Counted from the first letter of the stretch, positions 5,401 to 40,214 are shown. The stretch: 64,000 nt of DNA from Macrostomum lignano (GCA_002269645.1 NIVC01001472.1:124001-188000); one strand, 5' to 3'. Numbers and translations are program-made. Notes: a model not told the origin generated them from the letters alone.

Positions 5401-6261
5401 GGCTCATCGATGATTAGGAATGACAACATGGCTAATAATCGAAGCGAAATCTAGTATTTTCTTGCCAAGCCTGAGCAACACACTAGCATCATAATATTGA
5501 TATTAATAGCCAGAATTACATGTATTACTCACCTGACCCAGCAGCGCCACCTCCGGCTGTCTCGATTCCGCCAATCCCTCGCCGCCAGCCGCCGACCCAG
5601 TCAGATCGGACAGAGTCTCCTGTATGACGGTGCGCTTATCGTGATTAACAATGTCCAGCCGGAGTCCGCTCTCGGACAAGCGGAATATATACGACAGATT
5701 GCCCCGCACAGCCGTGGTGCCGTCCATGCCAATCAGGGTGGAGTCCACTCGGACAAGCGAGCCGGATTTGTACACTCGGCAACTGTCGTTGGGGCAATAG
5801 CGACTAATCAAAGGTATCCAAGACGAGAAATCCCATTTGAGTTCAACGTAGAAATCAGGCGATTCGTTCAGTTGCTGCAACAGGCGTCTGGTGTCGGCGT
5901 TGAAGTGGCGCTGCATCTGCAGAATCCTGTAGCTAAGGACAGAGGATGTCAGCTCCACATCGGATCGGCTGATTGCCTCGTCCAGCACGTCCCAGATGCC
6001 GTCGTTGGCCTGGGTGCTGGCGCCGGCGTCCAGCAGAAGTTTGGCGCAGTCTACCCGGCAAAGGACTACAGCCAGCTGCAGCGCTGTCCGGTGTCGAGGG
6101 TCTTTGAGCTCGAGTTTGGCCGTGACCGCCTCAGACGATGACGCATCAGTGTTGAGCTCCGCCAGCTGGCGTTTCAACCAGTCGGTGTCGTCGTTCCAGA
6201 CGGCGGCGTGCAGCGGGAAAGATTCTTTGATTGGACTGCCCGCGGTGCTAGTAGAGGCCAT
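2405..6261 (-). CDS. ANKRD13: Ankyrin repeat domain-containing protein 13 (ankyrin repeats + GPCR-chaperone-like middle domain + C-terminal UIMs), ~633 aa
   Basis: join of exons 6261..5533, 5165..4740, 4561..4355, 2944..2405, all phase 0 with GT-AG. Motifs: FPLHAAVWNDD, DPRHRTALQLAV, DFYVELKWDFSSWIPLISRYCPNDSCRVYKSGSLVRVDSTLIG, LREFVTLQLPAGFPLRVEIP, VDERAFAIPGGY; UIMs EEQDLLQMALAQS and EEEQLRRVLELSQTEK. Confidence 0.93.
2995..3462. repeat. 20-bp tandem array (CTAGTTCATGGACTGCTAAT)n in ANKRD13 intron 3
   Basis: Seen directly; variants CGTGGATTG/CATGGTCTG. Confidence 0.95.
3463..4334. repeat. 39-bp tandem array (CTAGCCAATGTGGATGCAGGTAGAGAATGGATTGCTAAT)n in ANKRD13 intron 3
   Basis: Seen directly; the stop-free unit produces ORFs 3534..4325 and 3586..4380. 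Confidence 0.95.
5195..5405. repeat. ~29-bp tandem array (TCTAATTATCACCTGGCTTATCAGTAGCA)n in ANKRD13 intron 1
   Basis: About 6-7 diverging copies seen directly. Confidence 0.85.
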
Positions 6262-15059: not shown

Positions 15060-17531
15060 TATTATTATTAGTTATTAGTTACCCATAATTGCATAGGCCA
15101 AATTGCAATATTGTTTTAATTTATATTTAGGCATAATCAATGTTATTATTAGGCACATGACAAAGATAGCCATGGCCATATACCAATAATCCAAGATGGC
15201 CATAGCTCTAAATTAAGAGTAAGGTAAGCCTAGGCCCTAGGTCTATATATTTCCTTATTTCTTATTATATAAGCATAGATCTAAAAAAGTTTTGAAGGGG
15301 ACATAGATAGATTAGGCCTAAGCCTACCAAATTGTATCTTTGCTTTTGATTGATTGATTTAAATAAAATGTAAAATAGGGCCTAGCAATATACAAAAATT
15401 ATAAAGTCAAACTAAAACTTATATTTTATAAGGATGCTTTTAGCCTTTATTCCTAAATATGCTATTGATTTTTTATTAGTAATAATTGTTATTGAAATGA
15501 TATATAAAACTTTAACTCATTTTAGAAACATAATTTTCAAGCTAATATTAATGTTTCCTATATTTATATTTGTAGCTTAGCTGGTAAATTCCATTATAAC
15601 TATTATTATATAACATTAAGACATAGAACCCTGATAGATACCTTGGAAAGGCAGCTAGATATTGTATATGTAGCCATGCTGTATGCAGAGTTTGGAATGC
15701 ATAATAGTCTAGATAGCAATATAATACTAGGCCTATACTATAGCTATAGCAAAGCTTTAGCTAGGCCTAATATAGTAATTTGTAGCTAGTGACAAAACTT
15801 GCTATGTATTGCACGCAGAGCAAGTATATTTTGCAGAGTGGAAAAATGGTAAAGCATGGAATGGGGATACAAAGAGCCTTATAGTAGGCCAGTGCAATAT
15901 GAGTCTTTGTCCCCCCCTCCCCAGCTTCCAGACATGCAGATCTTACAGAGGTTGAACCAATCAATTGGGGCTCGGCCCACGCTGCATAGAGGTAGATAGT
16001 GCATTTCTACTAAGACAGTGCACTAGACGCTGGGGACAGACTGTCTAGGGGTGGAGTACACTCTTTGCCACAAATAGTTATTTTTTGCTAAAATCAATCA
16101 TATAGTCATACCTACCTACTTATCTACCTATCTATAATAGATCAATAATTTTTAGTATAAATAAAACAACAATAATAAGAAACAAGCTATAGCTTAATAT
16201 TAGCCATTATTAGGTTATTAATATTAGGTTATAATAAATTAGGCCTAGGTCTATTAAATATATAGAAACATTGCTATTATCCTTGCTTATTAGCAATATT
16301 GGCTATTTTAATCACAATGACAATTAGATATATATCTAGCGTTGGCTAGGCTTTGACTATTTTCTATTTCCTTGTTTATTATTATTAGCAATAGCTAGCT
16401 AGGTTGTCTTTCTTATAATAGTATAGCTTTCAATTGGAGCTCTAGTCTTTCTTATCTTCTTAGAATAATAAATATCTACAATTTTATATTATAACCACTG
16501 GCTACCACATAATATTAAATATATAATTATAAGCAAATATAAGATATATAAATCAACTTTATTTAAAGATTTAAATAGACCAATTTTAAATTTCAAATTT
16601 TATACATATTTTGTCTATAAAACATGTAAGATGAAATGGTTAGGGAGGAAAATAGAAAAGAAGAAAGAAATAGATAAATGAAGTGCTTGATATATCAATA
16701 AGCAATAACCTTCCACCTTATCCCTGTTTTTATACCTATACCTATTAATTTGTTTGATAGGCCTAGTCTATCTATATATCTGTATATCTAAGGTCTGCAC
16801 ATCCTATTTCTCCATTTTTATTTGGAATCTTACTAGTTTAGACTTTGTGCCTAATCCCATTGCCTTAAGAGTCAAGATTTCATATCCCAAATTGGTACAT
16901 ATTTAACAATTTACTATATAAGTTGTATTGATTCATCTGACTTAATCTGTTCTTTATTTTTATATTGAAGATGTCAATTAAGCCATGAGCTGCAGTTTAT
17001 AACTATTTTGATCTAAGTATAAGTTTTGTGCTTCAAATAATTAAGTTTTGTCTTTGCCTCATCATTAAAATGCACTATTACTAGAAGATTTTAAAAAATA
17101 ATTTCAATTTTAGAAAACTTTGTCTTAAAATTTCAATTGAAAAATCAGTTTCAATCTATCTCTAGTTTCTATAATAAATATAATAGACTATTTGCAATAT
17201 GATATTAGATTAAATAAATGTTTAATTAACCAAAAATGGAAACCTGAACCCCCCTAATTGGGACCCAGGACTTTTGGGATTTCAAGGTTTCTATCACTTG
17301 TCAAATTGGAGTAATCTGTAAAAGATAAAGTCTGTAGACTTTTGACACTTCTGTCAGCCAGAGAGACTCAGCAGTGTAAAGGGTAGGGTAGAGATGTTGG
17401 TGGTTTGTTTGATTTTGAACTTTTCTGATGCACTGCATGCACTGCACTGCTGATACTTGAAACCCAGCTAACATTACTATTGAATTGGCCCTTTTCCAGC
17501 CAAGTATATTCATATTATCAACAAAGCAGAC

Positions 17532-18832
17532 ATGGCGGCAAGCAAAGGCCTGAAAATTCTTGTTGGCTGCAAGCGAGTCATTGACTACGCTGTTAAAGTT
17601 CGCGTCAAACCAGACAGGTCTGGGGTTGTGACCGAGGGCGTCAAGCACTCCATGAACCCATTCGACGAGATCGCTGTAGAAGAGGCTGTCCGCATGAAAG
17701 AGAAGAAACTGGCTGGCGAAGCCGTGGCCATCTCGGTTGGCCCACCGCAGTCCCAGGAGACTCTGCGCACCGCACTGGCGATGGGCATCGATCGGGCCAT
17801 TCACGTTGAGATTCCGCTGGCCCAATTAGAGAAACTGCAGCCAATTCACGTGTCAAAGCTATTGGCCAAGGTGTGCGAATCAGAGAAACCGGATTTAGTC
17901 ATCCTTGGCAAGCAGGCTATTGATGACGATTGCAACCAGACTGGCCAGATGCTGGCTGCCCTGCTTGACTGGCCTCAGGCCACCTTCGCCTCCAAGATTG
18001 AGCCTAGCCAGGTTAGCGATTGTTATAGATCTCATCGATTCTCTGATAGATCTCATCGATTCTCTGATAGATCTCTTCGATTGTCTGATAGATCTCATCG
18101 ATTCTCTGATAGATCTCTTCGATTGTCTGATAGATCTCATCGATTCTCTGATAGATCTCTTTGATTCTCTGATAGATCTCATCGATTCTCTGATAAATCT
18201 TATCGATTCTCTGATAGATCTCTTCGATTCTCTGATAGATCTCATCGATTCTCTGATAAATCTTATCGATTCTCTGATAGATCTCTTCGATTCTCTGATA
18301 GATCTCTTCGATACTCTGATAGATCTCTTCGATTCTCTAATAGATCTCTTAGATTCTCCTATAGATCTCATCGATGATAGATCTCATCGATTCTCTTATA
18401 GATCTCATCGACTCTGTTATAGATCGTATCTTATCTCTCCATTGCCCATCACTGACTCTCCATTGCCCATCACTGACTCTCCATTGCCATCACTGACTCT
18501 CCATTGCCCATCAATACCCTCCGCAGGACTCTAAGCAGCTCCGGGTGACCCGCGAGGTGGACGGCGGCCTGGAGACCATCGATGTGTCGGTCCCGGCCGT
18601 CGTGACCAGCGACCTGCGGCTGAACGAGCCCCGCTACGCAACCCTGCCGAACATCATGAAGGCGAAGAAGAAGCCGCTAGCCAAGATGTCCCCCGACCAG
18701 CTCGGCGTGGATCTGCAGCCCCGCCAGGAGGTGATCAGCGTCGAGGACCCGCCGGTGCGCAAAGCTGGCGCCAAAGTTGAATCAGTGGAAGACCTCGTTG
18801 GCAAGCTTCGCGAGAAGGGCCTGGTGAAGTAG
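17532..18832 (+). CDS. ETFB: Electron transfer flavoprotein subunit beta, ~261 aa
   Basis: Exons 17532..18011 and 18527..18832 (phase 0; GTTAGC donor, CCGCAG acceptor). Motifs: [77 protein letters not shown]. Confidence 0.97.
18020..18510. repeat. Two adjacent 21-bp arrays filling the ETFB intron: (TCTGATAGATCTCATCGATTC)n then (CCATTGCCCATCACTGACTCT)n
   Basis: Seen directly; generates ORFs 17895..18371 and 17905..18534. Confidence 0.93.
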
Positions 18833-19539
18833 ACTGATTGATTGCGCAGCCAAGTTGGTGTTTGAACTGGAGAGCCTTTTAGGAGCGGGGGCTGTGTTAA
18901 TCCAATGATGATTCTATATTATGGCAATCTTTTTTGGGGCTCAATTGCGTCTTACGTATTTAACGACAGCTGGAGTTTATCTCGGCGCGAGTTTAAATTG
19001 TGACGAAGAATGAATTTATAAGAAAACCAGTTAAAGCAAACTACGAAAGATTGCCATTATTTTGTGTGCGTGTTTTCACTTTGCTCCATTAGATTCCCCT
19101 GGCTTTGATTGACAGCTTAGCTCATGCTGTGTTTTTAATTGAAACCATTTGGCGATTAGTAAATTATATAGTGTATCGATAATAGTTAGCCTATCAAATT
19201 GCTGCTCGCTCTCATTATAGCGCTGATTTGAGTTTAATAAATTATGCCGCTCCCAGCCCAGTGTTCCAGTCCATATGCTACTATAGGTATCCACTGGTCT
19301 TAAAGCTGCTTATTCATTTTCGACAAGAAATGTGTTTTTTTACTGTGTTCGCGTTCTGGACAAGGTAAATCGTACCGCAACCTTTTCTTGTTAAATTTTT
19401 TGTTTAGCTATGAATTGATATGAAATAAAAGCCGAATATGATTGTTTCATTGTTGAATTGAATTTTCCTAGTTTAAAAATGTTTTAAGATTTGTGCTTTT
19501 TTAAAGGTAAAATTGCTGCTTCTATTTTCCCACTGTTCC

Positions 19540-20405
19540 AGTCCAGTATGCTCTTAGAAAGGAGTCCTTGGTTTTACCTGACAGGCTTCCAGTCCAGTTG
19601 ACTTCTAGAAAGGAGCCCTTGGCTGACCCGATTGGACTTCCAGTCCAGTAGATTTTTAGATCGAAAGAGTCCTTGGATTTCTCTGATAGGCTCCCAGTCC
19701 AGTTGACTTCTAGAAAGGAGCCCTTGGCTGACCCGATTGGACTTCCAGTCCAGTAGATTTTTAGATCGAAAGAGTCCTTGGATTTCTCTGATAGGCTCCC
19801 AGTCCAGTTGACTTCTAGAAAGGAGCCCTTGGCTGACCCGATTGGACTTCCAGTCCAGTAGATTTTTAGATCGAAAGAGTCCTTGGATTTCTCTGATAGG
19901 CTCCCAGTCCAGTTGACTTCTAGAAAGGACTCCTTGGCTGACCCAATTGGACTTCTAGTCCAGTAGATTTTTAGATCGAAAGAGTCCTTGGATTTCTCTG
20001 ATAGGCTCCCAGTCCAGTTGACTTCTAGAAAGGACTCCTTGGCTGACCCAATTGGACTTCTAGTCCAGTAGATTTTTAGATCGAAAGAGTCCTTGGATTT
20101 CTCTGATAGGCTCCCAGTCCAGTTGACTTCTAGAAAGGACTCCTTGGCTGACCCAATTGGACTTCTAGTCCAGTAGATTTTTAGATCGAAAGAGTCCTTG
20201 GATTTCTCTGATAGGCTCCCAGTCCAGTTGACTTCTAGAAAGGACTCCTTGGCTGACCCAATTGGACTTCTAGTCCAGTAGATTTTTAGATCGAAAGAGT
20301 CCTTGGATTTCTCTGATAGGCTCCCAGTCCAGTTGACTTCTAGAAAGGAGCCCTTGGCTGACCCAATTGGACTTCTAGTCCAGTAGATTTTTAGAAAGGA
20401 GTCCT
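19540..20405. repeat. 105-bp tandem array (dimer of ~52-bp subunits) between ETFB and NSA2
   Basis: CCAGTCCAGTTGAC recurs at 19694 and 19799 (period 105); both halves start CCAGTCCAGT and carry AAAG(G)AG.CCTTGG. Confidence 0.92.
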
Positions 20406-20544
20406 TGGAGTAATTTTAATAGTTTAAGGCCTACAGGGACTCATTATTTATCTTCAGTCTCGGGAATCTAGCACACAATTTAGAAATTTAGTTTTCAAAT
20501 CGGTTTTCTACTATAAGTAGTTTGTAATTTTTAATATTTTTTAG

Positions 20545-21663
20545 CCTCAGAACGAGCACATCGAGCTGCACCGGAAGCGGCACGGCCGCCGGTTCGATCA
20601 CGATGAGAAGCAGCGCAAGAAGGAGGCCAGACAGGGCCGGCTGCGGTCTAAGAAGGCGCGAACTCTGCGTGGACTCAAGGCCAAGCTGTACAACAAGGAG
20701 CGGCACAAGGAGAAGGTGCAGATGAAGAAGACGCTGCGTGCGCACGATCAGCGGGACACGCGGCAGCGAGCCGACGATCAGGAGGTTCCGGAGGGCGCCA
20801 AGCCTGTCTACCTGCTGGATAGGGAGGACCAGACCAGGGCCAAGGTGCTGTCTAACATGCTCAAGCAGAAGCGAAAGGAGAAAGCAGGTGAGTAATGCTT
20901 TTTTGTGATCCCTCACATCAGCCACTCCCTGAATCCCATGTCAGCCACTCCCTGACTCCCATGTCAGCCACACTCTCTGATCCCCACATCAGCCGCTCTC
21001 TGATCCCCACATCAGCCACTCCCTGACTCCCATGTCAGCCACACTCTCTGATTCCCACATCAGCCACTCCTTGATCCCCTCATCAGTCACTCCTTGGGTT
21101 AGTGGAGTGGATAGTTACTCCTTGATCCCACACCAGATATTCCCCATATCAATTGCAACCCCTAATCCCCACCCCCATACGGGGGAAGCGCACCTACACA
21201 ATTGGAACCCCTCTAATCCGCAGGCAAGTGCGACGTGCCGATCCCGAAGGTCCGCGCCACGTCCGAGGCGGAGGCGTTCCGCGCTCTGCGCAGCGGCAAA
21301 TCCAAGCGCAAAGCCTGGAAGCGGATGGTTACCAAGGTGACATTTGTGCCTGACGGTTTCACTAGGAAGCCGCCGAAATATGAGCGATTTATTCGGCCAA
21401 CAGGACTGCGCTTCAAGGTCGCTCACGTGACTCATCCGGAGCTCAAAGCCACGTTCCAGCTGCCGTTGCTGGGCGTGAAAAAGAATCCAACATCGTCTCT
21501 GTACACCAGCCTGGGCATCATCACTAAGGGCACGGTGATCGAGGTGAACGTCAGCGATCTGGGCCTGGTGACGCAGTCCGGCAAAGTTGTTTGGGGGAAA
21601 TACGCCCAGGTGACTAACTGTCCGGAGAATGACGGCTGCATCAATGCCGTGCTACTGGTTTGA
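20545..21663 (+). CDS. NSA2: Ribosome biogenesis protein NSA2; initiator Met not found in local genomic sequence
   Basis: Exons 20545..20887 and 21224..21663 (phase 1). Starts [14 protein letters not shown] right after TTTTTTAG; includes [71 protein letters not shown]. Confidence 0.95.
20915..21090. repeat. Degenerate ~22-24-bp array (TCAGCCACTCCCTGACTCCCATG-like) in the NSA2 intron
   Basis: About 7 diverged copies seen directly. Confidence 0.75.
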
Positions 21664-22254
21664 CAAGCTTCAAAAAGGCCATTTTTTTCTATTCGACTAC
21701 TTAAAGTAGTTTGTGTTTGTCGAAAACCTGGCAAAATATGTTTCGGCTTGAGCATTTTAAACGTTGCCCTTAATTGATGCGCTTCTCCTAGCCGGCCTAA
21801 TCCTTGTCTTAAGTATGTCTATTCGTGCTTCGATATAACTAAACTGTGTGGCTGAATAAATTGATAGGCTTTGCATTGGCTGCTGCAAGTAGCAAGGCAG
21901 ACCGTTGTTGCTTTTGTCGCTTTGGCGGACTTGTGAGCACAATTTTTTGAGCTCAAACGAAATCGTTGCAGTTAGAAACTAGTTCTTCACTATTTTTTTC
22001 AAAATTAAAATCAATCGTCTAAAACAGAGATTCTGGAGTCATCGTCTCATTGGTTATTCTCGTCGATTTGCACCTTAGCGATGATTGAGTCATCCATCTC
22101 TCTGGTTTGGTATCCTTCATCCGATATCTGAGCCATTATAGTGCATCTCTTTTGTCTCTTCGGAGAGCACATTGATGGTAGAGTTATCTCTTGATTGATC
22201 TCGTTAGTGAGCGCAAGATGCAACACTTGATTGATCTCGTTAATGAGCAAAATA

Positions 22255-22800
22255 TGCATCTCTTGATTGGTCTCTGTGAGCACAAGATTCATCCCTTGAT
22301 TGGTCTCTGTGAGCACAAGATGCGTCTCTTGATTGGTCTCTGTGAGCACAAGATGCATCTCTTGATTGGTCTCTGTGAGCACAAGATTCATCCCTTGATT
22401 GGTCTCTGTGAGCACAAGATGCATCTCTTGATTGGTCTCTGTGAGCACAAGGTTCATCCCTTGATTGGTCTCTGTGAGCACAAGATGCATCTCTTGATTG
22501 GTCTCTGTGAGCACAAGATGCATCTCTTGATTGGTCTCTGTGAGCACAAGATTCATCCCTTGATTGGTCTCTGTGAGCACAAGATGCATCTCTTGATTGG
22601 TCTCTGTGAGCACAAGATGCATCTCTTGATTGGTCTCTGTGAGCACAAGATTCATCCCTTGATTGGTCTCTGTGAGCACAAGATGCATCTCTTGATTGGT
22701 CTCTGTGAGCACAAGATGCATCTCTTGATTGGTCTCTGTGAGCACAAGATTCATCCCTTGATTGGTCTCTGTGAGCACAAAATTCATCCATCTCTTGATT
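22255..22800. repeat. 33-bp tandem array (CTTGATTGGTCTCTGTGAGCACAAGATGCATCT)n, stop-free in several frames
   Basis: About 16 copies with two alternating variants (GATGCATCT / GATTCATCC). Confidence 0.95.
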
Positions 22801-25800
22801 GGTCTCGTTGACGAGCAACATATCAATGGTTGAATAATCCTAAGTCTCATTAACGAATGTGAGACTCTTTGAGTCATCTTCCAGACGAATCTCGTCTATC
22901 CGTGTGCCGTCGTTTCTGATTTGCACCCAGTTGAACTTTGGCGTGTTTGTTTTGCTTTGTCATTTGTACTCTGTGACTTGTATTCGCTAAGCGGTACATT
23001 TATTTTGCCATTCAAGAGCTTTGCGGAAGTTCGTGTACGAACTACTTCGCTAAGCCTGTTGGGGAGACAAATCAAACAGGAGCTTAATGACCCTGGCTTG
23101 TTCTATGCAAACAATAGACCGGCCCGAAAACGGTCATCAAATTCGACATAAAACGCTATCAGCATTAAAATAGCAGATAAAATAGCAGACTATTTAAATA
23201 GCAGAATGGGGGCCGTCGTTTGCACAAGAGTTTTTGCAATAGAGCTGCTTGTTACTTTAAACAACGGACGGTCATTATCTTTTTTAAATATAAGAGCATC
23301 TTTCATGGGCCGAGTAGGGCGAGGTCTCTGTTAGAAACGCTATTTTTTGTCTACTCCAGCAGATGCATCATGTGACCGCAGGGTTAGACTAATCCTTTCA
23401 TTCCAGTGCTGATGGACAGTTATATCTCGTCAGCGGGTCAGGGTTGGCGGGATTAGATCGTGCCGACGCTGATTGCTGATTCGCATTTATTTGAAGTGGA
23501 TCGAGCGGGGCCAACCGCATGATGGCGCTTTACTGATGACTTGCGTCTTCCTGGCGAAGATTTGGAGATTTCATCAGCAGAAAGTTTGTCTTACGAGGCC
23601 TTTAACCGCCTATTTAAAGTTTGGAGTCCAAATTTGGCGGTGCGGGGGTCGGTGGACATGGGCCAATGGGTATTGGCAGGAGGAAAGATTTTCGTTTCGA
23701 TGCAGCAGTCGCGTTAGAAAAACGGCGTTTGTGGCGGGTATAGTAGCGGGAGGTGCCGCGGGTGGGAGCTTGTGCGGCGGTGACAACTGCGGAGCGGATT
23801 GCAGGGGAGGCGAGCTGATGTAAGGCTGGTGATGGAGGCGATCAACCGGGTCAAGGCCCCCTCCTCCCCTACAATCGGCTGGAAAAAAGTAATATGGCGC
23901 CCCCTTGCAGTAGCTTTGGCGTCCCTACACGTATCTGAGATGTGGCCTCCCCATGCAGTGAAAAATTATGGCTACACCCCTGCAATCAACGAGTTCAATT
24001 ATAGGTATCTGGCAGATCTTATAAATACAACCTTCCTCAGTCCGTAATATCTTGAAAATCTCGGCTCGGGCACCTTGGGGATTATAGCGTGAAGCTGACC
24101 CTGGCATGGGGGCTTTTCCAGTCAGCTATTTTTCTACCCATCATCTCCCTAATCCCTCCAGGTATCCCAGCCAAGTCTGTGTATCTCCTTGCTCGTTATT
24201 TTTCTCTCTCCTCTCAGATCCCCTTCATCAGTCTTGACCTTCCAATTCCCTTCTGATCTTCCTATGCCGCGCCCACTGCCTACATCAGGCCGGTTTACAT
24301 TGGTGTTCGGACTGGCGGGTCCCGCTACTTCCCCGCGCTGCCTTCAGCTGAGGCCGAGGGTCTATAAATTTTGGCCTTCCAACCTAACTTTAGAAGTGGT
24401 CAAAAATCGTAGCAAAACAAATGATAACTAATTTTTTTGAGCCTGTCCCTGGGGCGGGATTTCGGCTGCAGGGAAAGTTTGCATTTAACCAAATACAACC
24501 TGTGGTTGCTACACGTACGAGCGTATCTTAAGAACCCGACGGTCTGCTGCTGTTCTTTCTGAACTTTCTGGGGGCTTAAAGGGTTGGACTTTCTGTGACC
24601 CTGTTTAACCAAATCGTTTATAGCTGGTAGCGCTGTTTAACTAGCAAGTACATGTGTACCAACTTACCCCGCTTTTTACAGGGAAAGGTTAAAAAGCAGA
24701 ACAGTTTTTTTCTGTTGAATGATTCTTTAAAAGGGTTTTTAGGTGTCACAGGCTGAGTCATGCAGGCGCACACGAATTTGACCCAGCAGCGCAGTTTCGC
24801 ACTTATCCTACCTTTCCCTCCCTCTCTAGCGATCTTTCTCCTCGCCCTGCCGATCCGGGGATAAACACGGCCACGACCTTGGAGGGGTGGTCGGGGGGGG
24901 GGGGGGTTAAGTAATACGAGGCGGCGTTTTCTGACAACAGAAAAAGGCGGAGCCGGCCGCAAGGACAAATCAACCAGTTGCGGCTCTGCCCCCCCCCCCT
25001 GCCCCATCTCTTTTCTTTTATGCACCCCCGCCAGTTAGACAGCGGCCGCAGCAGATGGGCAATTATGACTAAAACTCTCTGCGACGATGCTGCGCAGAAA
25101 CGACGTCTCGCCCGCTGCCAAGATGCGGATGGGGCCGATGGGTGGCTGCATGCAGGAGGTCCCGCTTTTTTTAAAGATCTCCGCCCGGTTGCCGGGTCGG
25201 TCGGGGCTCTTATCTGGTTGGAAATCTGGCAGTTTTTGCTATATCGCATAAAATACTGGATGGGAAAGAATGTGGAAAGGAATAATTATTTGCTCTTCGA
25301 ATGCGATAGTGTTATATGAAGCTTATGCATTATAATAGTCAATAAATTACATGACTAATTCCAGTGTAGAAGGGGGCCGTAGCCCGGTGGTCTGGCGCGG
25401 CGCTTTGATGTGCCAGCGGCCCAGGCTCGATTCCCAGTGCAGGCACATTAATTTGGGGCTGAATTGGAAACTCGGCTTGGCTCTGCTCGTGCAATTAACG
25501 GCCAACCTCGGCCAAAGGAGGGCCAGCCCCCAAGGCACAGTGAAGTGTACATGTCTAACGATAAATAAAGTTAGGGCCGCTGTACACTCATGTGTGAGTG
25601 TGTACCTGTCGTATGACTGCGTACGTATCCGCGCGCTTGTGTACCTGTTCAGGGGAGTCGGCGGAACAGGCAGTAATGCCTCTCGCCGGTTGTGAGACAA
25701 TGTCGTTTAAAGTGCGCCAGGGTAAAGTACACAGCCCTCTGCCTCTAATAAAAATACGTGTTAGCATTAGCCGAGTTAACACAAGTTTCACGTTAATGCC

Positions 25801-26296: not shown

Positions 26297-29200
26297 ATGA
26301 AAGCCACTCTACCGCCAATGTTTCAATTGCTGTTGCCGTTGCTACTGCTGCTGGACTCGCCAGCACGGCTGTCTGCTGGTCGCTCGCAGCTGCCGCTGGG
26401 ACTGACTCAGACGGTGCTGCAACACCGGAAGGTGATCGACATTCAAGACGCGATGGACAGGCAGCTGCTGTACACTCTAGCCACGACTCGGTGAGATAAA
26501 CTGAGACTGGCTTTGCCGTGCATGCGACAATTGGGAAAAGTAGCACTTCGCGAATTTTTTCAAATTGATTGTAAACAGGGATGATTTGAAGATGCACGCA
26601 AGTACAGGAGTTTTGCTACAAAAACAAGTCAATTAGAAAATATGTCTGGGAACTAATTAGATAAAATTCGCATCAAGCTTATTTTGACGTAGACTATGAG
26701 ATATAAGCATCGCAGATTTTAAATTCGCGCCAAGCTATGAACTATCATGGATTTCAAATTCGTGCCAAATCCTGAACAGTGGCTTACCATGCAATCAGCC
26801 CGTTTTTAATCTTCGCATTATAAACTTCCACGAGATTTTTTGTGTTCTTTAGAAGGCGACTTCTAAAATCATAAAATTTCTATGAAAATTAGACTTCTTT
26901 ACAATATCTGACGGTGTTGTTGAGATTAAAACAAATGCGTCACACGTTTGTTTTCATCCAGTCCACCCATCCCAGCTTCTACCACTTTTTTCCCATGAAA
27001 AATTGGCTTTGCAAAGAAGCAGCTTCCAGGCCTGTCCCCCTATTTAAAGTGCATATCCTTGGGCTAAAATCGCCTTTTTTTAAGAGTCGAGCCGCGTTAC
27101 AAAGCGAGAAATTTTCTGGTCCGCGCGACAGAAAACAAGGCCCGCCGCCTGTAGTCTGAGCGGAGGACAGAATAAGGTTATAATAGAGAGGATGAGCCTG
27201 TGGGATATTGGGACGAAGAAATAGGATAAAGCGATATTCGTCATTTTTTCTACTTGAAGCTGGGCCGGCGGTAGTCGCGACCCCGTCGGTTGACTGACGC
27301 TGCGGCGTCACATGACGCAGGTAAATCTCCCCTGCCCCATCGGGATAACTGACATTCGCTAACCATAGCCCCCCTAATGTTGCCTATCCAGGCACGAATA
27401 CGGAACAGCGGTTCGGCCGCCGTCTTGTCAGTGCAAATTTACCAGCCCAACGGTCGTTTCTTGACCTATCTATCTCTCTTTTCTCTTTAATCTTTTCGAA
27501 TTTTACCGCCGCAGCCGCCGCCACTTGAATGGGCGCCTAAATTTGGTGGCAAAACTGTGTAATATGTATATAGCTGCGGTAGACTTTCTGCAGCAGAACA
27601 AATCGGCTAGAGTGTCCGTTCAGATGTTCAAAGTCTGAACCCTTTGTTTCCCTCCTACCCCCTCATGTAGCTCCCGCAGCTGGGAGGCGTCTGTCTGCAG
27701 TCGTGGAATCAGTGGGACATGGAGGCATTTTTCCGTCTGTTGGTCAAGGGGCCAAGCTGGGACCCGATTGCTGGAGCAAAAATGAATACAGATTAGTAGA
27801 TTTCAGACTCTGTAGGGACAGACAGAGAGACAGACGACCTGCGTCGAATCTTGTCTATTTCGTGTATACAATGTTCAGGGTGCCCCTCCAAGCCAGGATG
27901 GAAAAGTGCAGTCGGCCCAATGCAACTGTCCCCGAAACTGGTCCTCGACCCTCGACTTGCACCCTCGACTTGCTGGTTAGCAGGTGCAGTCGTTTTGATG
28001 CCGTATGAAAGTTAGGGCGTCCCCTAATAATCTTTTCTCGAACTGCGAAACTTTTCTCCATGGTTTTTTTTTCAATGCGACGTTTACCCTTGAACGTGCA
28101 ACGAATGTTGTCCATCCGCGCCCGCTCTGGGACCGGTTCAGCAGCTCCTGTTGCACTAATCTGTCTCTGATTTTGCTCGAATCAGCAGGACAATTATATT
28201 CTACGTTTTGCATAATGCTGCCTCGCTTGGTTGGTTTCTGATATGTTTTGTCTGATTCATGTGTGTTTATCGGTTGGTTTCCGATCCGTTTTGTCTGATT
28301 CATGTGTGTTTATCGGTTGGTTTCTGATATGTTTTGTCTGATTTATGTTTGTTTATCGGTTGGTTTCTGATATGTTTTGTCTGATTTATGTTTGTTTATC
28401 GGTTGGTTTCTGATATGTTTTGTCTGATTTATGTTTGTTTATCGGTTGGTTTCCGATCCGTTTTGTCTGATTCATGTGTGTTTATCGGTTGGTTTCCGAT
28501 CCGTTTTGTCTGATTCATGTGTGTTTATCGGTTGGTTTCCGATCCGTTTTGTCTGATTCATGTGTGTTTATCGGTTGGTTTCCGATCCGTTTTGTCTGAT
28601 TCATGTGTGTTTATCGGTTGGTTTCCGATCCGTTTTGTCTGATTCATGTGTGTTTATCGGTTGGTTTAAAGTTAGTAAGATACAAGTTTGTTAGAACCAG
28701 ACGTAATTTCTTATCAATTTATGCTGTCCATCTTTTTCAACAGTTTCCTTGCTTCGGTGCCACCTGTACTTTCTCTTAATTTCATCTTGTTTGTCCGCCC
28801 GTCTACCTTTTCTTTTTCCAATTTACCTGTTCTTTTGCATGTTTCTTTTCCATGACATTCTGTCCTTTTCCGGTCTGTACCCGAGCTCCGAATAAAAAAG
28901 CAGAGAAAAAACACGGTGGCATACAATGCTTCCAGTGCAAGCGGGCAACGGCGATCCGAACCATCTTTTAACGATACTGGGCTTCAAATTGCTGCAGTCT
29001 TGCCTCTATCGATTCTACCGGTGCCTCCAACCACTGGCTGATTTGCTTAATTTAGGGTTGCTGCAGCCCCTGCACCTGCAGATATATAGCGGCGCGGATC
29101 TAGGGCAGCGGCCTGAAAAGGGAAAAATAAGACGGCGAAGGAACTTGAAGTTAGTGCACTGATAACCAGGGGAGAAATATCCCACACCGTTGGCGGTATC

Positions 29201-37280: not shown

Positions 37281-37314
37281 CTTCTAGAATTCTGATTCTA
37301 GAATATTCTAGAAT
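37281..37314 (+). promoter_or_regulatory. Heat-shock element array
   Basis: Four perfect alternating pentamers aTTCt aGAAt aTTCt aGAAt (37295..37314) plus cTTCt aGAAt (37281..37290), ~40 bp upstream of the TATA box of Hsp90. Confidence 0.9.
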
Positions 37315-37353
37315 AAAAAGAGAATCCATGGATTTCCAAGCCCGCACCAAAGC

Positions 37354-37360
37354 TATATAA
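37354..37360 (+). promoter_or_regulatory. TATA box of Hsp90
   Basis: TATATAA between the HSEs and the ATG at 37489. Confidence 0.8.
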
Positions 37361-37488
37361 GCAGCCAATTCGCGGCCCGCTCGGAGCCTTACTGAAATTC
37401 TTACTCTGAAGCTGTTCACAGTGCGCACTCAAGCGTTAGCATTTGTATTTAATATTAAAACCGTATCAGAAGCTGCAGAGACAACAGA

Positions 37489-40214
37489 ATGGCTGATACC
37501 GAGGTTGAGACTTTCGCCTTCCAGGCCGAGATTGCTCAGTTAATGAGCTTGATCATCAACACTTTCTATTCTAACAAGGAAATCTTCCTTCGTGAGCTCA
37601 TTTCCAACGCTAGCGATGCTATTGACAAGATTCGCTACCAGAGCCTCACGGATTCGTCGGTTCTGGATAGCGGACGCGATCTGGAAATCAAGATCATCCC
37701 TAACAAGAGCGACAATTCTCTGACCATCATCGACAGTGGCATCGGTATGACCAAGGCCGATCTGGTCAACAACCTTGGTACCATCGCTCGCTCTGGCACC
37801 AAGGCCTTCATGGAGGCGCTGCAGGCTGGCGCTGATATCAGCATGATTGGTCAGTTCGGTGTTGGCTTCTATTCTGCCTACCTTGTAGCTGACCGTGTTG
37901 TTGTTACGTCCAAGCATAATGACGACGAGCAATACGTCTGGGAGTCGTCTGCTGGCGGCAGCTTCACCGTCCGGCCGGACCATGGCGAGCCCATTGGACG
38001 CGGCACCAAGATCGTTCTGTACCTGAAAGAGGATCAAACCGAGTACATCGAAGAGAGGAAGGTCAAGGAGGTCATCAAGAAGCACTCTCAGTTCATTGGT
38101 TATCCTATCAAGCTTGTTCTGGAGAAGGAGCGGGAAAAGGAGGTAAGATTATTCTATGATGTGGTTAATTTATTATTTTTAATTATAGTTCTACAGCTAG
38201 TGTGCATTTTTTATTATTATTATATCAATGGAATATATAATATTATAAATATATAATTTCTATAGAATATTATTATTAGAAAAATTTACGCCTTTAGGCT
38301 TTAGTTTTATTGTTATATGTTAATTTGTTTTAGTTTGTGCTTTTCATTTTTATAAGTTTTTACTACTATTTAAAAATTTATATTCCTATATTACTATTAT
38401 TAGTAACAATATTGTATATTACATTCTAGTAATCTAGACAACTTGTATATAGAATGGCAGCAAGATCGATAACAAACTTCTTATATTTTTATAGCCAGTT
38501 GCGGTTTGTTTTAACTCAAAAATCAAAATCAGTCTTTCTTTAATAAATTTATTCTTAAACAACTAATTAAATTAATACACCAACTTTGTCTTTATTCACA
38601 GGTCAGCGATGACGAAGCTGAGGAAGAAAAGGAAGAGAAGAAAGAAGACGGTGAAGATGCCGAGAAGGAGAAGCCAAAGGTCGAGGATGATTTGGATGAC
38701 AATGATGAAGATGAGAAAGGCGACAAGAAGAAGAAAAAGAAGATCAAGGAGAAGTACATTGACGAGGAGGAGCTGAACAAGACCAAGCCTATCTGGACCA
38801 GGAACCAGGATGACATCACTCAGGAGGAGTATGGCGAGTTCTACAAGTCCCTGACTAATGACTGGGAGGAGCACCTGGCTGTGAAGCACTTCAGCGTTGA
38901 AGGTCAGCTCGAGTTCCGTGCTCTTCTGTTTGTGCCGAAGCGCGCGCCGTTCGACCTCTTCGAGAACCGAAAGAAGCGCAACAACATCAAGCTGTACGTG
39001 CGTCGCGTCTTTATCATGGACAACTGCGAGGAGCTGATCCCAGAGTACCTGAACTTCATCAAGGGCGTCGTGGACAGCGAAGATCTGCCGCTGAACATCA
39101 GCCGTGAGATGCTGCAGCAGAACAAGATTCTCAAGGTCATCCGCAAGAACCTCGTGAAGAAGTGCATGGAGCTGTTCGACGACATCGCCGAGGACAAGGA
39201 GAACTTCAAGAAGTTCTACGAGCAGTTCGGCAAGAACCTGAAGCTGGGCATCCACGAGGACAGCACCAACCGCAAGAAGCTGGCCGACTACCTGCGCTAC
39301 TACTCCACCAGCTCCGGCGACGACTGGACCAGCCTGAAGGACTACGTCAGCCGCATGAAGGAGAACCAGAAGGACATCTACTACATCACCGGCGAGTCGA
39401 AGGAAGCGGTCGCCCATTCCGCCTTTGTTGAGCGTCTGCGCAAGCGCGGCCTGGAGGTGCTGTACATGACCGATCCCATCGACGAGTACGCCACCCAGCA
39501 GCTGCGCGAGTACGACGGCAAGAAGCTCGTCTGCGTCACCAAGGAGGGCCTCGAGCTGCCTGAGGACGAGGACGAAAAGAAGGCCTTCGAGGAGAAGAAG
39601 GCCTCCTTTGAGCCGCTGTGCAAGGTCATGAAGGACATCCTGGACAAGAAGGTCGAGAAGGTGGTCGTGTCCAACCGGCTGGTTGACTCGCCCTGCTGCA
39701 TCGTCACGTCGCAGTACGGCTGGTCCGCCAACATGGAGCGCATCATGAAGGCGCAGGTGAGCCGGCAATTTGCTGCTGTGACTCGGATTTTACCAGTTTT
39801 TGTAGCCGGAAACTGACAGATTATAAACCGCCTCCCCAATGCCCCGCCTCCCATCGCCAGGCTCTGCGCGACTCCTCAACCATGGGCTACATGGCGGCCA
39901 AGAAGCACCTGGAGATCAACCCCGACCACTCCATCTGCGGGATGCTGAGGCAGCGCACCGAGGCCGACAAGAACGACAAGTCGGTGAAGGACCTGGTGCA
40001 GCTGCTGTACGAGACCGCCCTGCTGTCGTCTGGCTTCGCCCTGGAGGACCCGCAGGTGCACGCCACCCGCATCCACCGCATGATCAAGCTGGGCCTCGGC
40101 ATCGAGGAGGACGACGTCCCTGACGCCGCCGCCGGCGAGTCCTCGTCTTCCATGCCAACTGAGGTCGGCGGCGATGCCAACGCCGACGACGCCAAGATGG
40201 AGGAGGTCGACTAA
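37489..40214 (+). CDS. HSP90: Cytosolic heat shock protein 90 (Hsp83), ~720 aa
   Basis: Exons 37489..38142, 38602..39756, 39861..40214 (all phase 0). Motifs: [51 protein letters not shown]-terminal MEEVD. Confidence 0.98.

What the first reader, a model, noticed from the sequence alone, without database searches (positions are those of the whole stretch)
18832..20560. NSA2 has no local start codon: Met probably donated by a spliced leader in an ETFB-NSA2 operon
Seen: the NSA2 frame starts at codon 2 (CCT CAG AAC GAG = PQNE; the family starts MPQNE) immediately after a T-rich acceptor (TTTTTTAG, 20544). Scanning 18833..20544 by eye I found no ATG|GT. The three best donor-like sites (19287, 19365, 19507) give no in-frame ATG. 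ETFB ends 1.7 kb upstream on the same strand. Established: flatworm spliced leaders end in AUG, and this AUG can serve as the initiator Met (shown in Schistosoma). Inference: SL-AUG + CCT... rebuilds the exact MPQNE N-terminus, so an essential ribosome-biogenesis gene would depend on trans-splicing for its start codon, likely as the downstream cistron of an operon.
Basis: partly seen in the sequence, partly recalled or inferred. Interest (0 to 1): 0.82.

Follow-up and report, generated by a model that had tools for sequence, protein, structure and literature searches.

The report
Spliced leader supplies NSA2's start codon
In this flatworm (Macrostomum lignano) the ribosome-assembly gene NSA2 has no start codon of its own and almost certainly gets its AUG from the trans-spliced leader RNA, a mechanism already known in flatworms and already implicit in the published annotation of this genome.

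Summary
The window is Macrostomum lignano Mlig_3_7 (NIVC01001472.1). NSA2 reads from codon 2 (CCT, 20545) straight after TTTTTTAG. That TAG is an in-frame stop, and no ATG|GT lies between the ETFB stop (18832) and 20544.

- The published M. lignano spliced leader ends in ...TTGCATG.
- GenBank models all four assembly copies of NSA2 as 5'-partial, starting at or 3 nt after this position.
- The three other copies carry ...TTGCATG|CCTCAG where the window has ...TTTTTAG|CCTCAG. The same replacement occurs at the ETFB 5' boundary. I read these as spliced-leader bases written into the assembly when it was polished with RNA-seq, which would make them traces of SL-junction reads.
- ETFB (Mlig000536g2) and NSA2 (Mlig000536g3) share a transcriptional-unit name. 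The repeat-adjusted gap is 859 nt. An operon is plausible but not proven.

New context: sea urchin, priapulid, nemertean and rotifer NSA2 genes have a first exon ending exactly in ATG|GT. The flatworm acceptor is therefore the ancestral intron-1 acceptor, and the leader replaces an ATG-only exon.

SL-donated AUGs are established for Schistosoma (Cheng 2006). This is a new member of a known kind, of modest interest.

The parts
17490..17499 (+). Trans-splice acceptor of ETFB (ccttttccAG)
   Evidence: a pyrimidine tract plus CAG, matching the published YTNCAG trans-splice motif. The GenBank ETFB model starts 2 nt inside the following exon. In the three other copies this spot reads ttatGCATG, the spliced-leader 3' end.
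17500..18011 (+). ETFB exon 1. The real start ATG is at 17532. An SL-AUG joined at 17500 would be out of frame and open an 18-codon upstream ORF that overlaps the ETFB ATG.
   Evidence: One search gives the splice model 17502-18011 + 18527-18832, which reproduces PAA67589.1 exactly. Pfam ETF PF01012.
18012..18526 (+). ETFB intron (GTTAGC...CCGCAG), mostly 21-nt tandem repeats
18527..18832 (+). ETFB exon 2 coding part, stop TAG at 18830-18832
18833..20544 (+). ETFB 3' UTR plus intercistronic region / NSA2 outron (1712 nt). AATAAA at 19236 and 19424. No ATG|GT.
   Evidence: The equivalent stretch is 1083, 1082 and 1653 nt in the other copies.
19557..20409 (.). Tandem array, 105 nt x 8.1 copies, which inflates the intergenic distance
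   Evidence: Copy number differs between the four assembly copies. Without it the spacing is 859 nt.
20524..20544 (+). NSA2 trans-splice acceptor (gtaatttttaatattttttAG). The TAG is an in-frame stop.
   Evidence: It is positionally homologous to the intron-1 acceptor of sea urchin, priapulid, nemertean and rotifer NSA2. It is replaced by ...tttGCATG in L002-L004.
20545..20887 (+). NSA2 first genomic exon, codons 2-115 (PQNEHIEL...)
   Evidence: PAA67590.1 'partial'.
20888..21223 (+). NSA2 intron (GTGAGT...CCGCAG) with 23/71-nt repeats
21224..21663 (+). NSA2 last exon, coding part, stop TGA at 21661-21663. Codon TGC at 21229-21231 gives Cys where the other three copies and the seven other animal NSA2 proteins aligned have Trp.

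Best explanation
NSA2 in Macrostomum lignano is an SL trans-spliced gene whose initiator AUG is the last three bases of the 35-nt spliced leader (CGGTCTCTTACTGCGAAGACTCAATTTATTGCATG).

Mechanism:
- The spliceosome joins the leader's donor (AUG|GUAAG) to the acceptor UUUUUUAG|CCU at 20544|20545.
- This discards the upstream outron and creates AUG-CCU-CAG-AAC..., which encodes MPQNEHIEL, the exact N-terminus of the family.

Origin: the acceptor is the ancestral bilaterian intron-1 acceptor. In other animals NSA2 exon 1 is a 5' UTR ending exactly in ATG|GT. In this flatworm the leader does the job of that exon.

Operon: the pre-mRNA most likely starts upstream of ETFB. ETFB is itself trans-spliced at 17499|17500, where the SL-AUG is out of frame. 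NSA2 would then be the downstream cistron of a two-gene transcriptional unit.

What is shown and what is inferred:
- Shown from sequence: the acceptor, the lack of a local ATG, the in-frame stop, and the conserved intron position.
- Taken from publications: the leader sequence and how the gene boundaries were built.
- Inferred: the junction in RNA, use of the SL-AUG by ribosomes, and the dicistronic precursor.
For: 1. The leader ends in ATG (PMC8629364).

2. There is no genomic alternative that keeps the conserved N-terminus.
- An in-frame TAG lies directly upstream, and there is no ATG|GT in the 1712-nt gap.
- The first internal Met is residue 61 of the full protein, inside conserved sequence.
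- The older UniProt model A0A1I8HI60 starts there and loses 60 residues.

3. All four GenBank NSA2 models are 5'-partial and start at or 3 nt after this acceptor. Gene 5' ends in that annotation were cut at peaks of SL-containing reads (PMC5730564).

4. Leader bases appear in the other three assembly copies.
- L002, L003 and L004 read aatatttGCATG|CCTCAG where the window reads aatatttTTTAG|CCTCAG. That is four substitutions in five bases within otherwise identical flanks, and it gives a 7-nt match to the leader's 3' end.
- The same replacement occurs at the ETFB boundary: ttatGCATG|CCAAG against ttttcCAG|CCAAG.
- These are the only two multi-base GCATG replacements in 13 kb.
- The assembly was polished with Pilon using RNA-seq mapped by STAR. 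STAR was run end-to-end for the transcriptome work. This explains leader bases overwriting the outron end.

5. The intron directly after ATG is conserved in Strongylocentrotus, Priapulus, Lineus and Rotaria. A further 41 metagenome loci have AG directly before codon 2, most with an ATG|GT 16-150 nt upstream.

6. Operon evidence.
- ETFB is Mlig000536g2 and NSA2 is Mlig000536g3. They share a transcriptional-unit prefix and have adjacent accessions PAA67589/PAA67590.
- They lie on the same strand.
- The gap is 859 nt after removing the tandem array, below the published 1-kb criterion.
- No other protein-coding gene is annotated for 7 kb upstream of ETFB.
Against: - No RNA read, cDNA or peptide was seen. 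Searches of the protein collection for an M. lignano product carrying the SL-encoded prefix or the Met found none.
- The window copy is the only one of four without leader bases in the assembly. It also carries Cys at a near-invariant Trp, so this copy may be weakly expressed.
- The reading of GCATG as a polishing artefact is an inference. The paper does not give the STAR settings used for polishing.
- The ancestral gene structure (ATG-only exon 1) raises the prior that a distant cis exon exists. One ATG|GTGAGT lies 20 kb upstream at 357.
- Operon: 859 nt is far from the ~100-nt mode of M. lignano intercistronic distances. A shared name prefix shows that some transcriptional unit in the cluster spans both genes, not that this copy's does. 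In L004 the two genes carry different prefixes.
Confidence: 0.85

Rival explanations
1. NSA2 is SL trans-spliced and takes the leader's AUG, but it is monocistronic. A promoter of its own lies in the 1.7-kb gap, and the sequence up to 20544 is simply its outron. ETFB is an independent neighbour.
For: In M. lignano about 60% of trans-spliced genes are not in operons. Operon intercistronic distances peak near 100 nt, against 859 nt (repeat-adjusted) or 1712 nt (raw) here. Two AATAAA signals at 19236 and 19424 would end ETFB more than 1.1 kb before the acceptor. In copy L004 the two genes carry different transcriptional-unit prefixes.
Against: In the window copy and in L002/L003, ETFB and NSA2 share the prefix Mlig000536. 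Under the published naming scheme this requires a transcriptional unit containing both sequences. The authors state that such units tend to break in repeat-rich intergenic regions, which would explain L004. The spacing passes their 1-kb criterion.
Confidence: 0.35
2. The ancestral structure is retained. A cis-spliced first exon ending in ATG|GT lies far upstream (candidates at 357, 15846, 16636), and ETFB is nested in NSA2 intron 1.
For: Sea urchin, priapulid, nemertean and rotifer NSA2 all have exactly this ATG-only exon 1, with introns up to 11.2 kb. There are 16 ATG|GT sites on the + strand upstream in the window, one with a consensus GTGAGT donor at 357. Flatworm acceptors are reported to be shared between cis- and trans-splicing (PMC12582326).
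Against: The RNA-derived bases written in front of CCTCAG in the other copies are TTGCATG. That matches the leader and none of the candidates, which end AAAATG, GAAATG and CAAATG. No GCATG|GT occurs upstream on this strand. All four published models are 5'-partial, with no upstream exon despite a deep RNA-seq-guided assembly. The nearer candidates have weak donors (GTAAAG, GTTAGG).
Confidence: 0.05
3. The GCATG in the three other copies is real genomic sequence. Those copies then encode their own ATG and are the working genes. The window copy, with TTTAG and Cys117, is a diverged or decaying homeolog.
For: Three of four copies agree. The window copy has a Cys at a near-invariant Trp.
Against: - The same leader-like replacement occurs at the ETFB boundary, where an ATG is out of frame and useless.
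- GCATG removes the AG. Transcripts would then have to start upstream and give a complete ORF, yet GenBank calls all copies partial from CCT or CAG.
- Gene models from the older ML2 assembly, for Trp-type copies, start at the internal Met. That is not expected if ATG-CCT were in the genome.
- The window's versions are canonical pyrimidine-AG acceptors at both sites.
- Documented RNA-seq polishing gives a simple cause.
- NSA2 coding sequences differ by only 4-5 nt, mostly synonymous.
Confidence: 0.06
4. Translation starts at the first genomic in-frame ATG (Met61 of the full protein), giving a 201-residue NSA2 as in UniProt A0A1I8HI60.
For: That model exists in UniProt for four M. lignano entries.
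Against: The 60 residues upstream are conserved at the protein level with all animals; P1-L8 and many later columns are invariant. Differences between copies in this stretch are synonymous only. So it is translated sequence.
Confidence: 0.02

Closest known systems
Schistosoma mansoni mRNAs that need the spliced leader's 3'-terminal AUG as initiator Met (Cheng, Cohen, Ndegwa & Davis 2006, J Biol Chem 281:733; cited in PMC9851317 and PMC12582326)
   Same: A flatworm leader ending in AUG, an acceptor placed directly before codon 2, and an ORF with no AUG of its own. As cited in PMC9851317, the SL-AUG is in frame in 28% of trans-spliced schistosome transcripts, and more than 40 cDNAs need it.
   Different: A different species (a free-living macrostomorph) and a different leader sequence. 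Here no translation experiment exists. I could not check whether NSA2 is among the schistosome cases: the paper is not held, and NSA2 was absent from the supplements searched.
SL-resolved operons of M. lignano (Wudarski 2017, PMC5730564; Ustyantsev & Berezikov 2021, PMC8629364) and of C. elegans
   Same: Same-strand neighbours, with the downstream gene trans-spliced. The published annotation names both genes from one transcriptional-unit cluster. The spacing falls under the authors' 1-kb repeat-adjusted cut-off.
   Different: The spacing (859 nt adjusted, 1712 nt raw) is well above the ~100-nt mode. The first gene, ETFB, is also trans-spliced. There is no specialised downstream leader, because M. 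lignano has a single SL.
Ancestral bilaterian NSA2 gene structure (exon 1 = 5' UTR + ATG, phase-0 intron, exon 2 from codon 2)
   Same: The acceptor sits at the identical codon boundary (ATG | CCN CAR AAY) in Strongylocentrotus purpuratus, Priapulus caudatus, Lineus longissimus and Rotaria socialis.
   Different: In those animals a cis exon supplies the ATG. In M. lignano no such exon is found within 1.7 kb, and the leader supplies it.

Membership tests
Flatworm mRNA with SL-donated initiator AUG | The species has an SL RNA whose leader exon ends in AUG followed by a GU donor | tested here: met
   The species is identified as M. lignano. The published leader is ...TTGCATG followed by GTAAG (PMC8629364). 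No SL RNA gene lies in the window itself.
Flatworm mRNA with SL-donated initiator AUG | A 3' splice acceptor directly before the first genomic codon, with no cis donor upstream to pair with it | tested here: met
   TTTTTTAG|CCT at 20544|20545. No ATG|GT in 18833-20544. No GCATG|GT on the + strand upstream.
Flatworm mRNA with SL-donated initiator AUG | The SL-AUG is in frame and restores the family N-terminus, and no genomic AUG can do so | tested here: met
   AUG+CCU CAG AAC encodes MPQNE, as in the eight other animal NSA2 proteins aligned. There is an in-frame TAG upstream. The next Met is residue 61.
Flatworm mRNA with SL-donated initiator AUG | The published gene boundary, set from SL-containing reads, coincides with the acceptor | tested here: met
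   PAA67590.1 starts at 20545 and is marked partial. The method is in PMC5730564. Leader 3' bases are present at the equivalent site in L002-L004. This is indirect: I did not see the read tracks.
Flatworm mRNA with SL-donated initiator AUG | SL-exon junction seen directly in RNA reads, ESTs or 5' RACE | not testable with these tools
   No M. lignano transcript-derived product was found in the protein collection.
Flatworm mRNA with SL-donated initiator AUG | Ribosomes initiate at the SL-AUG (N-terminal peptide, ribosome profiling or reporter) | not testable with these tools
   Experimental. Shown only for Schistosoma (Cheng 2006, as cited).
SL-resolved operon (polycistronic transcriptional unit) | Adjacent genes on the same strand, with the downstream one SL trans-spliced | tested here: met
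   ETFB is at 17500-18832 and NSA2 at 20545-21663, both on the + strand. For trans-splicing evidence see the rows above.
SL-resolved operon (polycistronic transcriptional unit) | Short intercistronic distance (published M. lignano criterion: under 1 kb after removing repeats; mode ~100 nt) | tested here: inconclusive
   1712 nt raw. 859 nt after removing the 853-nt tandem array. This passes the cut-off but lies far from the mode.
SL-resolved operon (polycistronic transcriptional unit) | One precursor transcript spans both genes | tested here: inconclusive
   The shared prefix Mlig000536 (g2, g3) implies that a transcriptional unit in the cluster contains both genes. The transcript itself was not seen. 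The L004 copy has split prefixes.
SL-resolved operon (polycistronic transcriptional unit) | No promoter between the cistrons | not testable with these tools
   Needs CAGE/TSS or chromatin data.
NSA2 / TINP1 ribosome biogenesis factor (Pfam PF01201, Ribosomal_S8e) | Full-length similarity and the family domain | tested here: met
   75-79% identity over 100% of the length to named NSA2 homologs, with PF01201 on all hits. 86% mean column identity in the alignment.

The most novel reading that the evidence does not exclude
The TTGCATG in front of NSA2, and the TGCATG in front of ETFB, in the three other genomic copies are real DNA rather than a polishing artefact. In that case the 3' end of the spliced leader was copied back from mRNA into the genome at two neighbouring trans-splice sites. 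For NSA2 this would re-create a genome-encoded start codon, which would be a route by which SL-dependent genes regain autonomy.
Probability: 0.06. Interest if true: 0.8.

Novelty: new member of a known kind. Interest (0 to 1): 0.3.

Why it matters
- Annotation: it gives a clean, checkable example of an essential, universally conserved gene whose start codon is not in its own locus. Pipelines that insist on a genomic ATG mis-model it. The UniProt entry for this gene loses 60 conserved residues, and GenBank calls it partial.
- Evolution: the comparison with other animals gives a simple route. NSA2 already had an exon consisting of a 5' UTR plus ATG, so a leader ending in AUG|GU could replace that exon with no change to the protein. 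This predicts that genes with a phase-0 intron right after the start codon should be over-represented among SL-AUG-dependent genes in flatworms.
- Practical caution for users of Mlig_3_7: at two boundaries in three of four copies of this locus, the trans-splice acceptor appears to be overwritten by leader bases. If this happens elsewhere in the assembly, it would distort acceptor-motif statistics and create false genomic ATGs.

Tried and rejected
- Direct transcript evidence. The exact 261-aa Met-version is not in the 15-billion-protein collection. A search with the SL-encoded prefix (VSYCEDSIYC) fused to the NSA2 N-terminus returned only unrelated organisms.
- Best non-M. lignano hits. P0002 and P0004 (79% identity, Logan RNA/DNA contigs) have ordinary 5' UTRs with their own ATG and no leader, so they say nothing about flatworms.
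- SL RNA gene in the window: none within 3 mismatches. Rfam found nothing in the window.
- Leader-like string at 26786-26830 on the minus strand: it does not fold better than shuffled sequence (z = +0.6), so I do not call it an SL RNA gene.
- Literature. Cheng 2006 is not held. NSA2 and ETFB are absent from the supplements of the two flatworm trans-splicing surveys. I found no statement on SL-AUG use for specific M. lignano genes.
- ENA metagenome scaffold from a related worm (L010). It shows a canonical TTTGCAG about 30 nt before the ETFB ATG, consistent with a real AG acceptor there. It is too diverged to prove what the M. lignano copies read.
- Bacterial-type promoter scanning was not used, because it does not apply to this eukaryote.
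Full report
**Identity of the window**

A protein search with the reconstructed NSA2 gave a 100% match to PAA67590.1, 'hypothetical protein BOX15_Mlig000536g3, partial [Macrostomum lignano]'. The encoding contig is NIVC01001472.1 of assembly GCA_002269645.1 (Mlig_3_7). Window position equals locus L001 position plus 14544. The organism is therefore a free-living flatworm in which SL trans-splicing and operons have been described genome-wide (PMC5730564, PMC8629364).

**Check of the observation**

- NSA2 start. The + strand reads ...gtaatttttaatattttttAG|CCT CAG AAC GAG CAC ATC GAG..., with the AG at 20543-20544. The frame upstream closes at once, because the TAG of the acceptor is an in-frame stop.
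- Gene model. It is 20545-20887, a GTGAGT...CCGCAG intron, then 21224-21663 with stop TGA. This gives 260 residues that lack only the Met.
- Homology. The protein is 75-79% identical over its whole length to animal NSA2 proteins. In a 10-sequence alignment the eight non-M. lignano sequences all start MPQNE, and P1, Q2, N3, E4, I6, E7 and L8 are invariant.
- No local start. The 1712 nt between the ETFB stop (TAG, 18830-18832) and the acceptor hold 13 ATGs, none followed by GT.
- Donor-like sites.

**The spliced leader**

The published M. lignano leader is a single 35-nt sequence, CGGTCTCTTACTGCGAAGACTCAATTTATTGCATG, followed in its 109-nt gene by GTAAG (PMC8629364). Leader-AUG plus CCU CAG AAC rebuilds MPQNE exactly. 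No SL RNA gene lies in the window.

**Evidence from the published annotation**

All four assembly copies of NSA2 are '5' partial' in GenBank: PAA67590.1, PAA47195.1/PAA78844.1 and PAA69730.1. They start at P2, or at Q3 in two of them. In that annotation, reads containing the leader were trimmed and mapped, and transcriptional units were cut at the resulting peaks (PMC5730564). In the window copy both gene models begin at canonical acceptors. NSA2 begins exactly at 20545. ETFB begins 2 nt inside the exon that starts at 17500, after ccttttcCAG.

An older, independent gene model (UniProt A0A1I8HI60, 201 aa, four M. lignano entries) starts at the first internal Met and drops 60 conserved residues. 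That is what a predictor does when no genomic ATG precedes CCT.

**Leader bases in the other copies**

I fetched the three other genomic copies (L002, L003, L004). They are 95-99% identical to the window and keep the order ETFB, NSA2, then a gene for an 856-aa protein (L003 ends before the third gene).

- NSA2 boundary. They read aatatttGCATG|CCTCAG where the window reads aatatttTTTAG|CCTCAG. That is four substitutions in five bases within otherwise identical flanks. It produces TTGCATG, the last seven bases of the leader, and removes the AG.
- ETFB boundary. They read ggccttatGCATG|CCAAG where the window reads ggcccttttcCAG|CCAAG. The string TTATGCATG is the leader's TTATTGCATG minus one T.
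- Specificity. Across 13 kb these are the only two multi-base replacements that create GCATG. Apart from them, the differences that create GCATG are two single-base changes, and the clustered differences lie in tandem repeats or are indels.
- Why it cannot be functional at ETFB. A leader-type ATG there is out of frame with the ETFB start at 17532 and serves no coding purpose. Selection for a start codon therefore cannot explain it.
- Likely cause. [quoted passage not shown] Untrimmed reads that begin with the last few leader bases, forced to align end to end, would put those bases on top of the outron end, and Pilon would then 'correct' the genome.

I therefore read the GCATG blocks as traces of SL-junction reads, left in the copies that attracted most RNA-seq reads. 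This is an inference.

**The cis-exon rival**

This rival deserves more weight than it first seems to.

- Sea urchin: ATG|GTAAGT, 761-nt intron, AG|CCT.
- Priapulid: ATG|GTAGGC, 11.2-kb intron.
- Nemertean: ATG|GTAGGT, 593-nt intron.
- Bdelloid rotifer: ATG|GTGAGA, 54-nt intron.

In all four, NSA2 has a first exon that ends exactly with the start codon. A degenerate pattern search of metagenome contigs found 41 more loci with AG directly before CCN CAR AAY GAR CAY, most with an ATG|GT 16-150 nt upstream. The intron between codons 1 and 2 is therefore ancestral for bilaterians, and the M. lignano acceptor is its homolog.

In M. lignano, however, the evidence points away from a cis exon:
- The RNA-derived bases in front of CCT are TTGCATG, not AAAATG, GAAATG or CAAATG.
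- No GCATG|GT exists on the + strand anywhere in the 20.5 kb upstream.
- No published model has an upstream exon.

I put this rival at about 5%.

The positive conclusion is evolutionary. The leader, which ends AUG|GU, has taken over the role of an exon that consisted of a 5' UTR plus AUG|GU, with no change to the protein.

**Operon**

In favour:
- ETFB is PAA67589.1 (Mlig000536g2) and NSA2 is PAA67590.1 (Mlig000536g3).
- Name prefixes were given to transcriptional units clustered at 95% nucleotide identity, and genes were then cut out of those units. Two unrelated sequences can share a prefix only if some unit in the cluster contains both.
- The pair L002/L003 behaves the same way (g8 and g7).
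- The gap is 1712 nt, of which 853 nt is a 105-nt tandem array. The remaining 859 nt is under the 1-kb repeat-adjusted cut-off used to call M. lignano operons.

Against:
- In L004, NSA2 has a separate prefix (Mlig011899g1). The authors note that units often break in repeat-rich intergenic regions, which would account for this.
- 859 nt is far from the ~100-nt mode.
- AATAAA signals at 19236 and 19424 would end ETFB more than 1.1 kb before the acceptor.

No other protein-coding gene is annotated in the 7 kb upstream of ETFB, so ETFB would be the first cistron, itself trans-spliced. I rate the operon at roughly 0.6. An internal promoter cannot be excluded without TSS data.

**Comparison with what is known**

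- All reported flatworm leaders end in AUG. Cheng et al. (2006) showed in Schistosoma mansoni that this AUG can serve as initiator Met, is in frame in 28% of trans-spliced transcripts, and is required by more than 40 cDNAs (as cited in PMC9851317 and PMC12582326).
- I found no paper that names NSA2, or that discusses which M. lignano genes depend on the SL-AUG.

The finding is therefore a correct, well-argued instance of a known mechanism at a locus whose trans-splicing and transcriptional-unit structure are already in the public annotation. It is a new member of a known kind.

**What remains open**

- No RNA or protein evidence was seen directly.
- The window copy is the only one without leader bases in the assembly.
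- It is also the only one with Cys (TGC, 21229-21231) at a Trp that is kept in the other three copies and in the seven other animal NSA2 proteins aligned. It may be the least expressed homeolog.
- The coding sequences otherwise differ by only three or four synonymous changes.

Noticed in passing
L002 5993-5997, L003 5993-5997, L004 5996-6000; and just upstream of the ETFB model starts at L002 3047, L003 3048, L004 2329 (equivalent to window 20540-20544 and 17491-17499): In three of the four Mlig_3_7 copies of this locus, both trans-splice acceptors are replaced by the 3' end of the spliced leader (TTGCATG, TTATGCATG) and the AG is lost. This is probably an artefact of Pilon polishing with RNA-seq. 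If it is general, it would corrupt acceptor motifs and create false genomic ATGs across the assembly. Only 44% of trans-splice sites showed the YTNCAG motif in PMC8629364; whether that is connected is my speculation.
   Followed up: partly
window 21229-21231: The window's NSA2 copy has TGC (Cys117) where the three other M. lignano copies have TGG (Trp), as do the seven other animal NSA2 proteins aligned. It is the only non-synonymous difference among the four copies.
   Followed up: partly
window 17500-17556: On ETFB mRNA the leader's AUG is out of frame. It opens an 18-codon upstream ORF ([18 protein letters not shown]) that overlaps the real ETFB start at 17532. ETFB translation would therefore need leaky scanning past the SL-AUG.
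   Followed up: partly
window 26780-26830, minus strand: The string TGCGAAGA-(15 nt)-TTGCATG|GTAAG resembles the leader (TGCGAAGA-(10 nt)-TTGCATG|GTAAG). It lies inside the range of the 856-aa gene, on the opposite strand. The 12-mer TTGCATGGTAAG alone is expected about 0.008 times in the window. The region does not fold better than shuffles (z = +0.6), so it could be a decayed SL RNA relic or chance.
   Followed up: partly
L052-L055 and L011-L051: A phase-0 intron directly after the initiator ATG of NSA2 is shared by sea urchin, priapulid, nemertean and rotifer. The same AG-before-codon-2 arrangement occurs in 41 unlabelled metagenome loci, most with an ATG|GT 16-150 nt upstream. An ATG-only first exon therefore seems ancestral for this gene.
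   Followed up: yes
window 37300-37491: The HSP90 gene (ORFs 37489-38256 and 38692-39816) has a classical promoter: a heat-shock element (agaatattctagaa), a TATA box (tatataagc) and its own ATG at 37489. It makes a useful contrast with the promoter-less, ATG-less NSA2 start.
   Followed up: partly
window 18025-18513, 19557-20409, 20906-21093, 22186-22806: Long tandem arrays (periods 21, 105, 23/71 and 33 nt) fill the ETFB intron, the ETFB-NSA2 gap, the NSA2 intron and the region after NSA2. Copy numbers differ between the four assembly copies.
   Followed up: partly
L010 (ENA metagenome scaffold WANG18-1_SAMN08389201 scaffold_163836): A 787-bp environmental contig encodes an ETFB exon 1 placed in the same 90% identity cluster as the M. 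lignano protein, presumably from a related Macrostomum-like worm. It has a TTTGCAG acceptor about 30 nt before the ATG, at a similar position to the window's ETFB acceptor.
   Followed up: partly
window 5503-6261, minus strand: An ORF with ankyrin repeats and the start of an ANKRD13 C-terminal domain, which is a neighbouring gene on the opposite strand.
   Followed up: no
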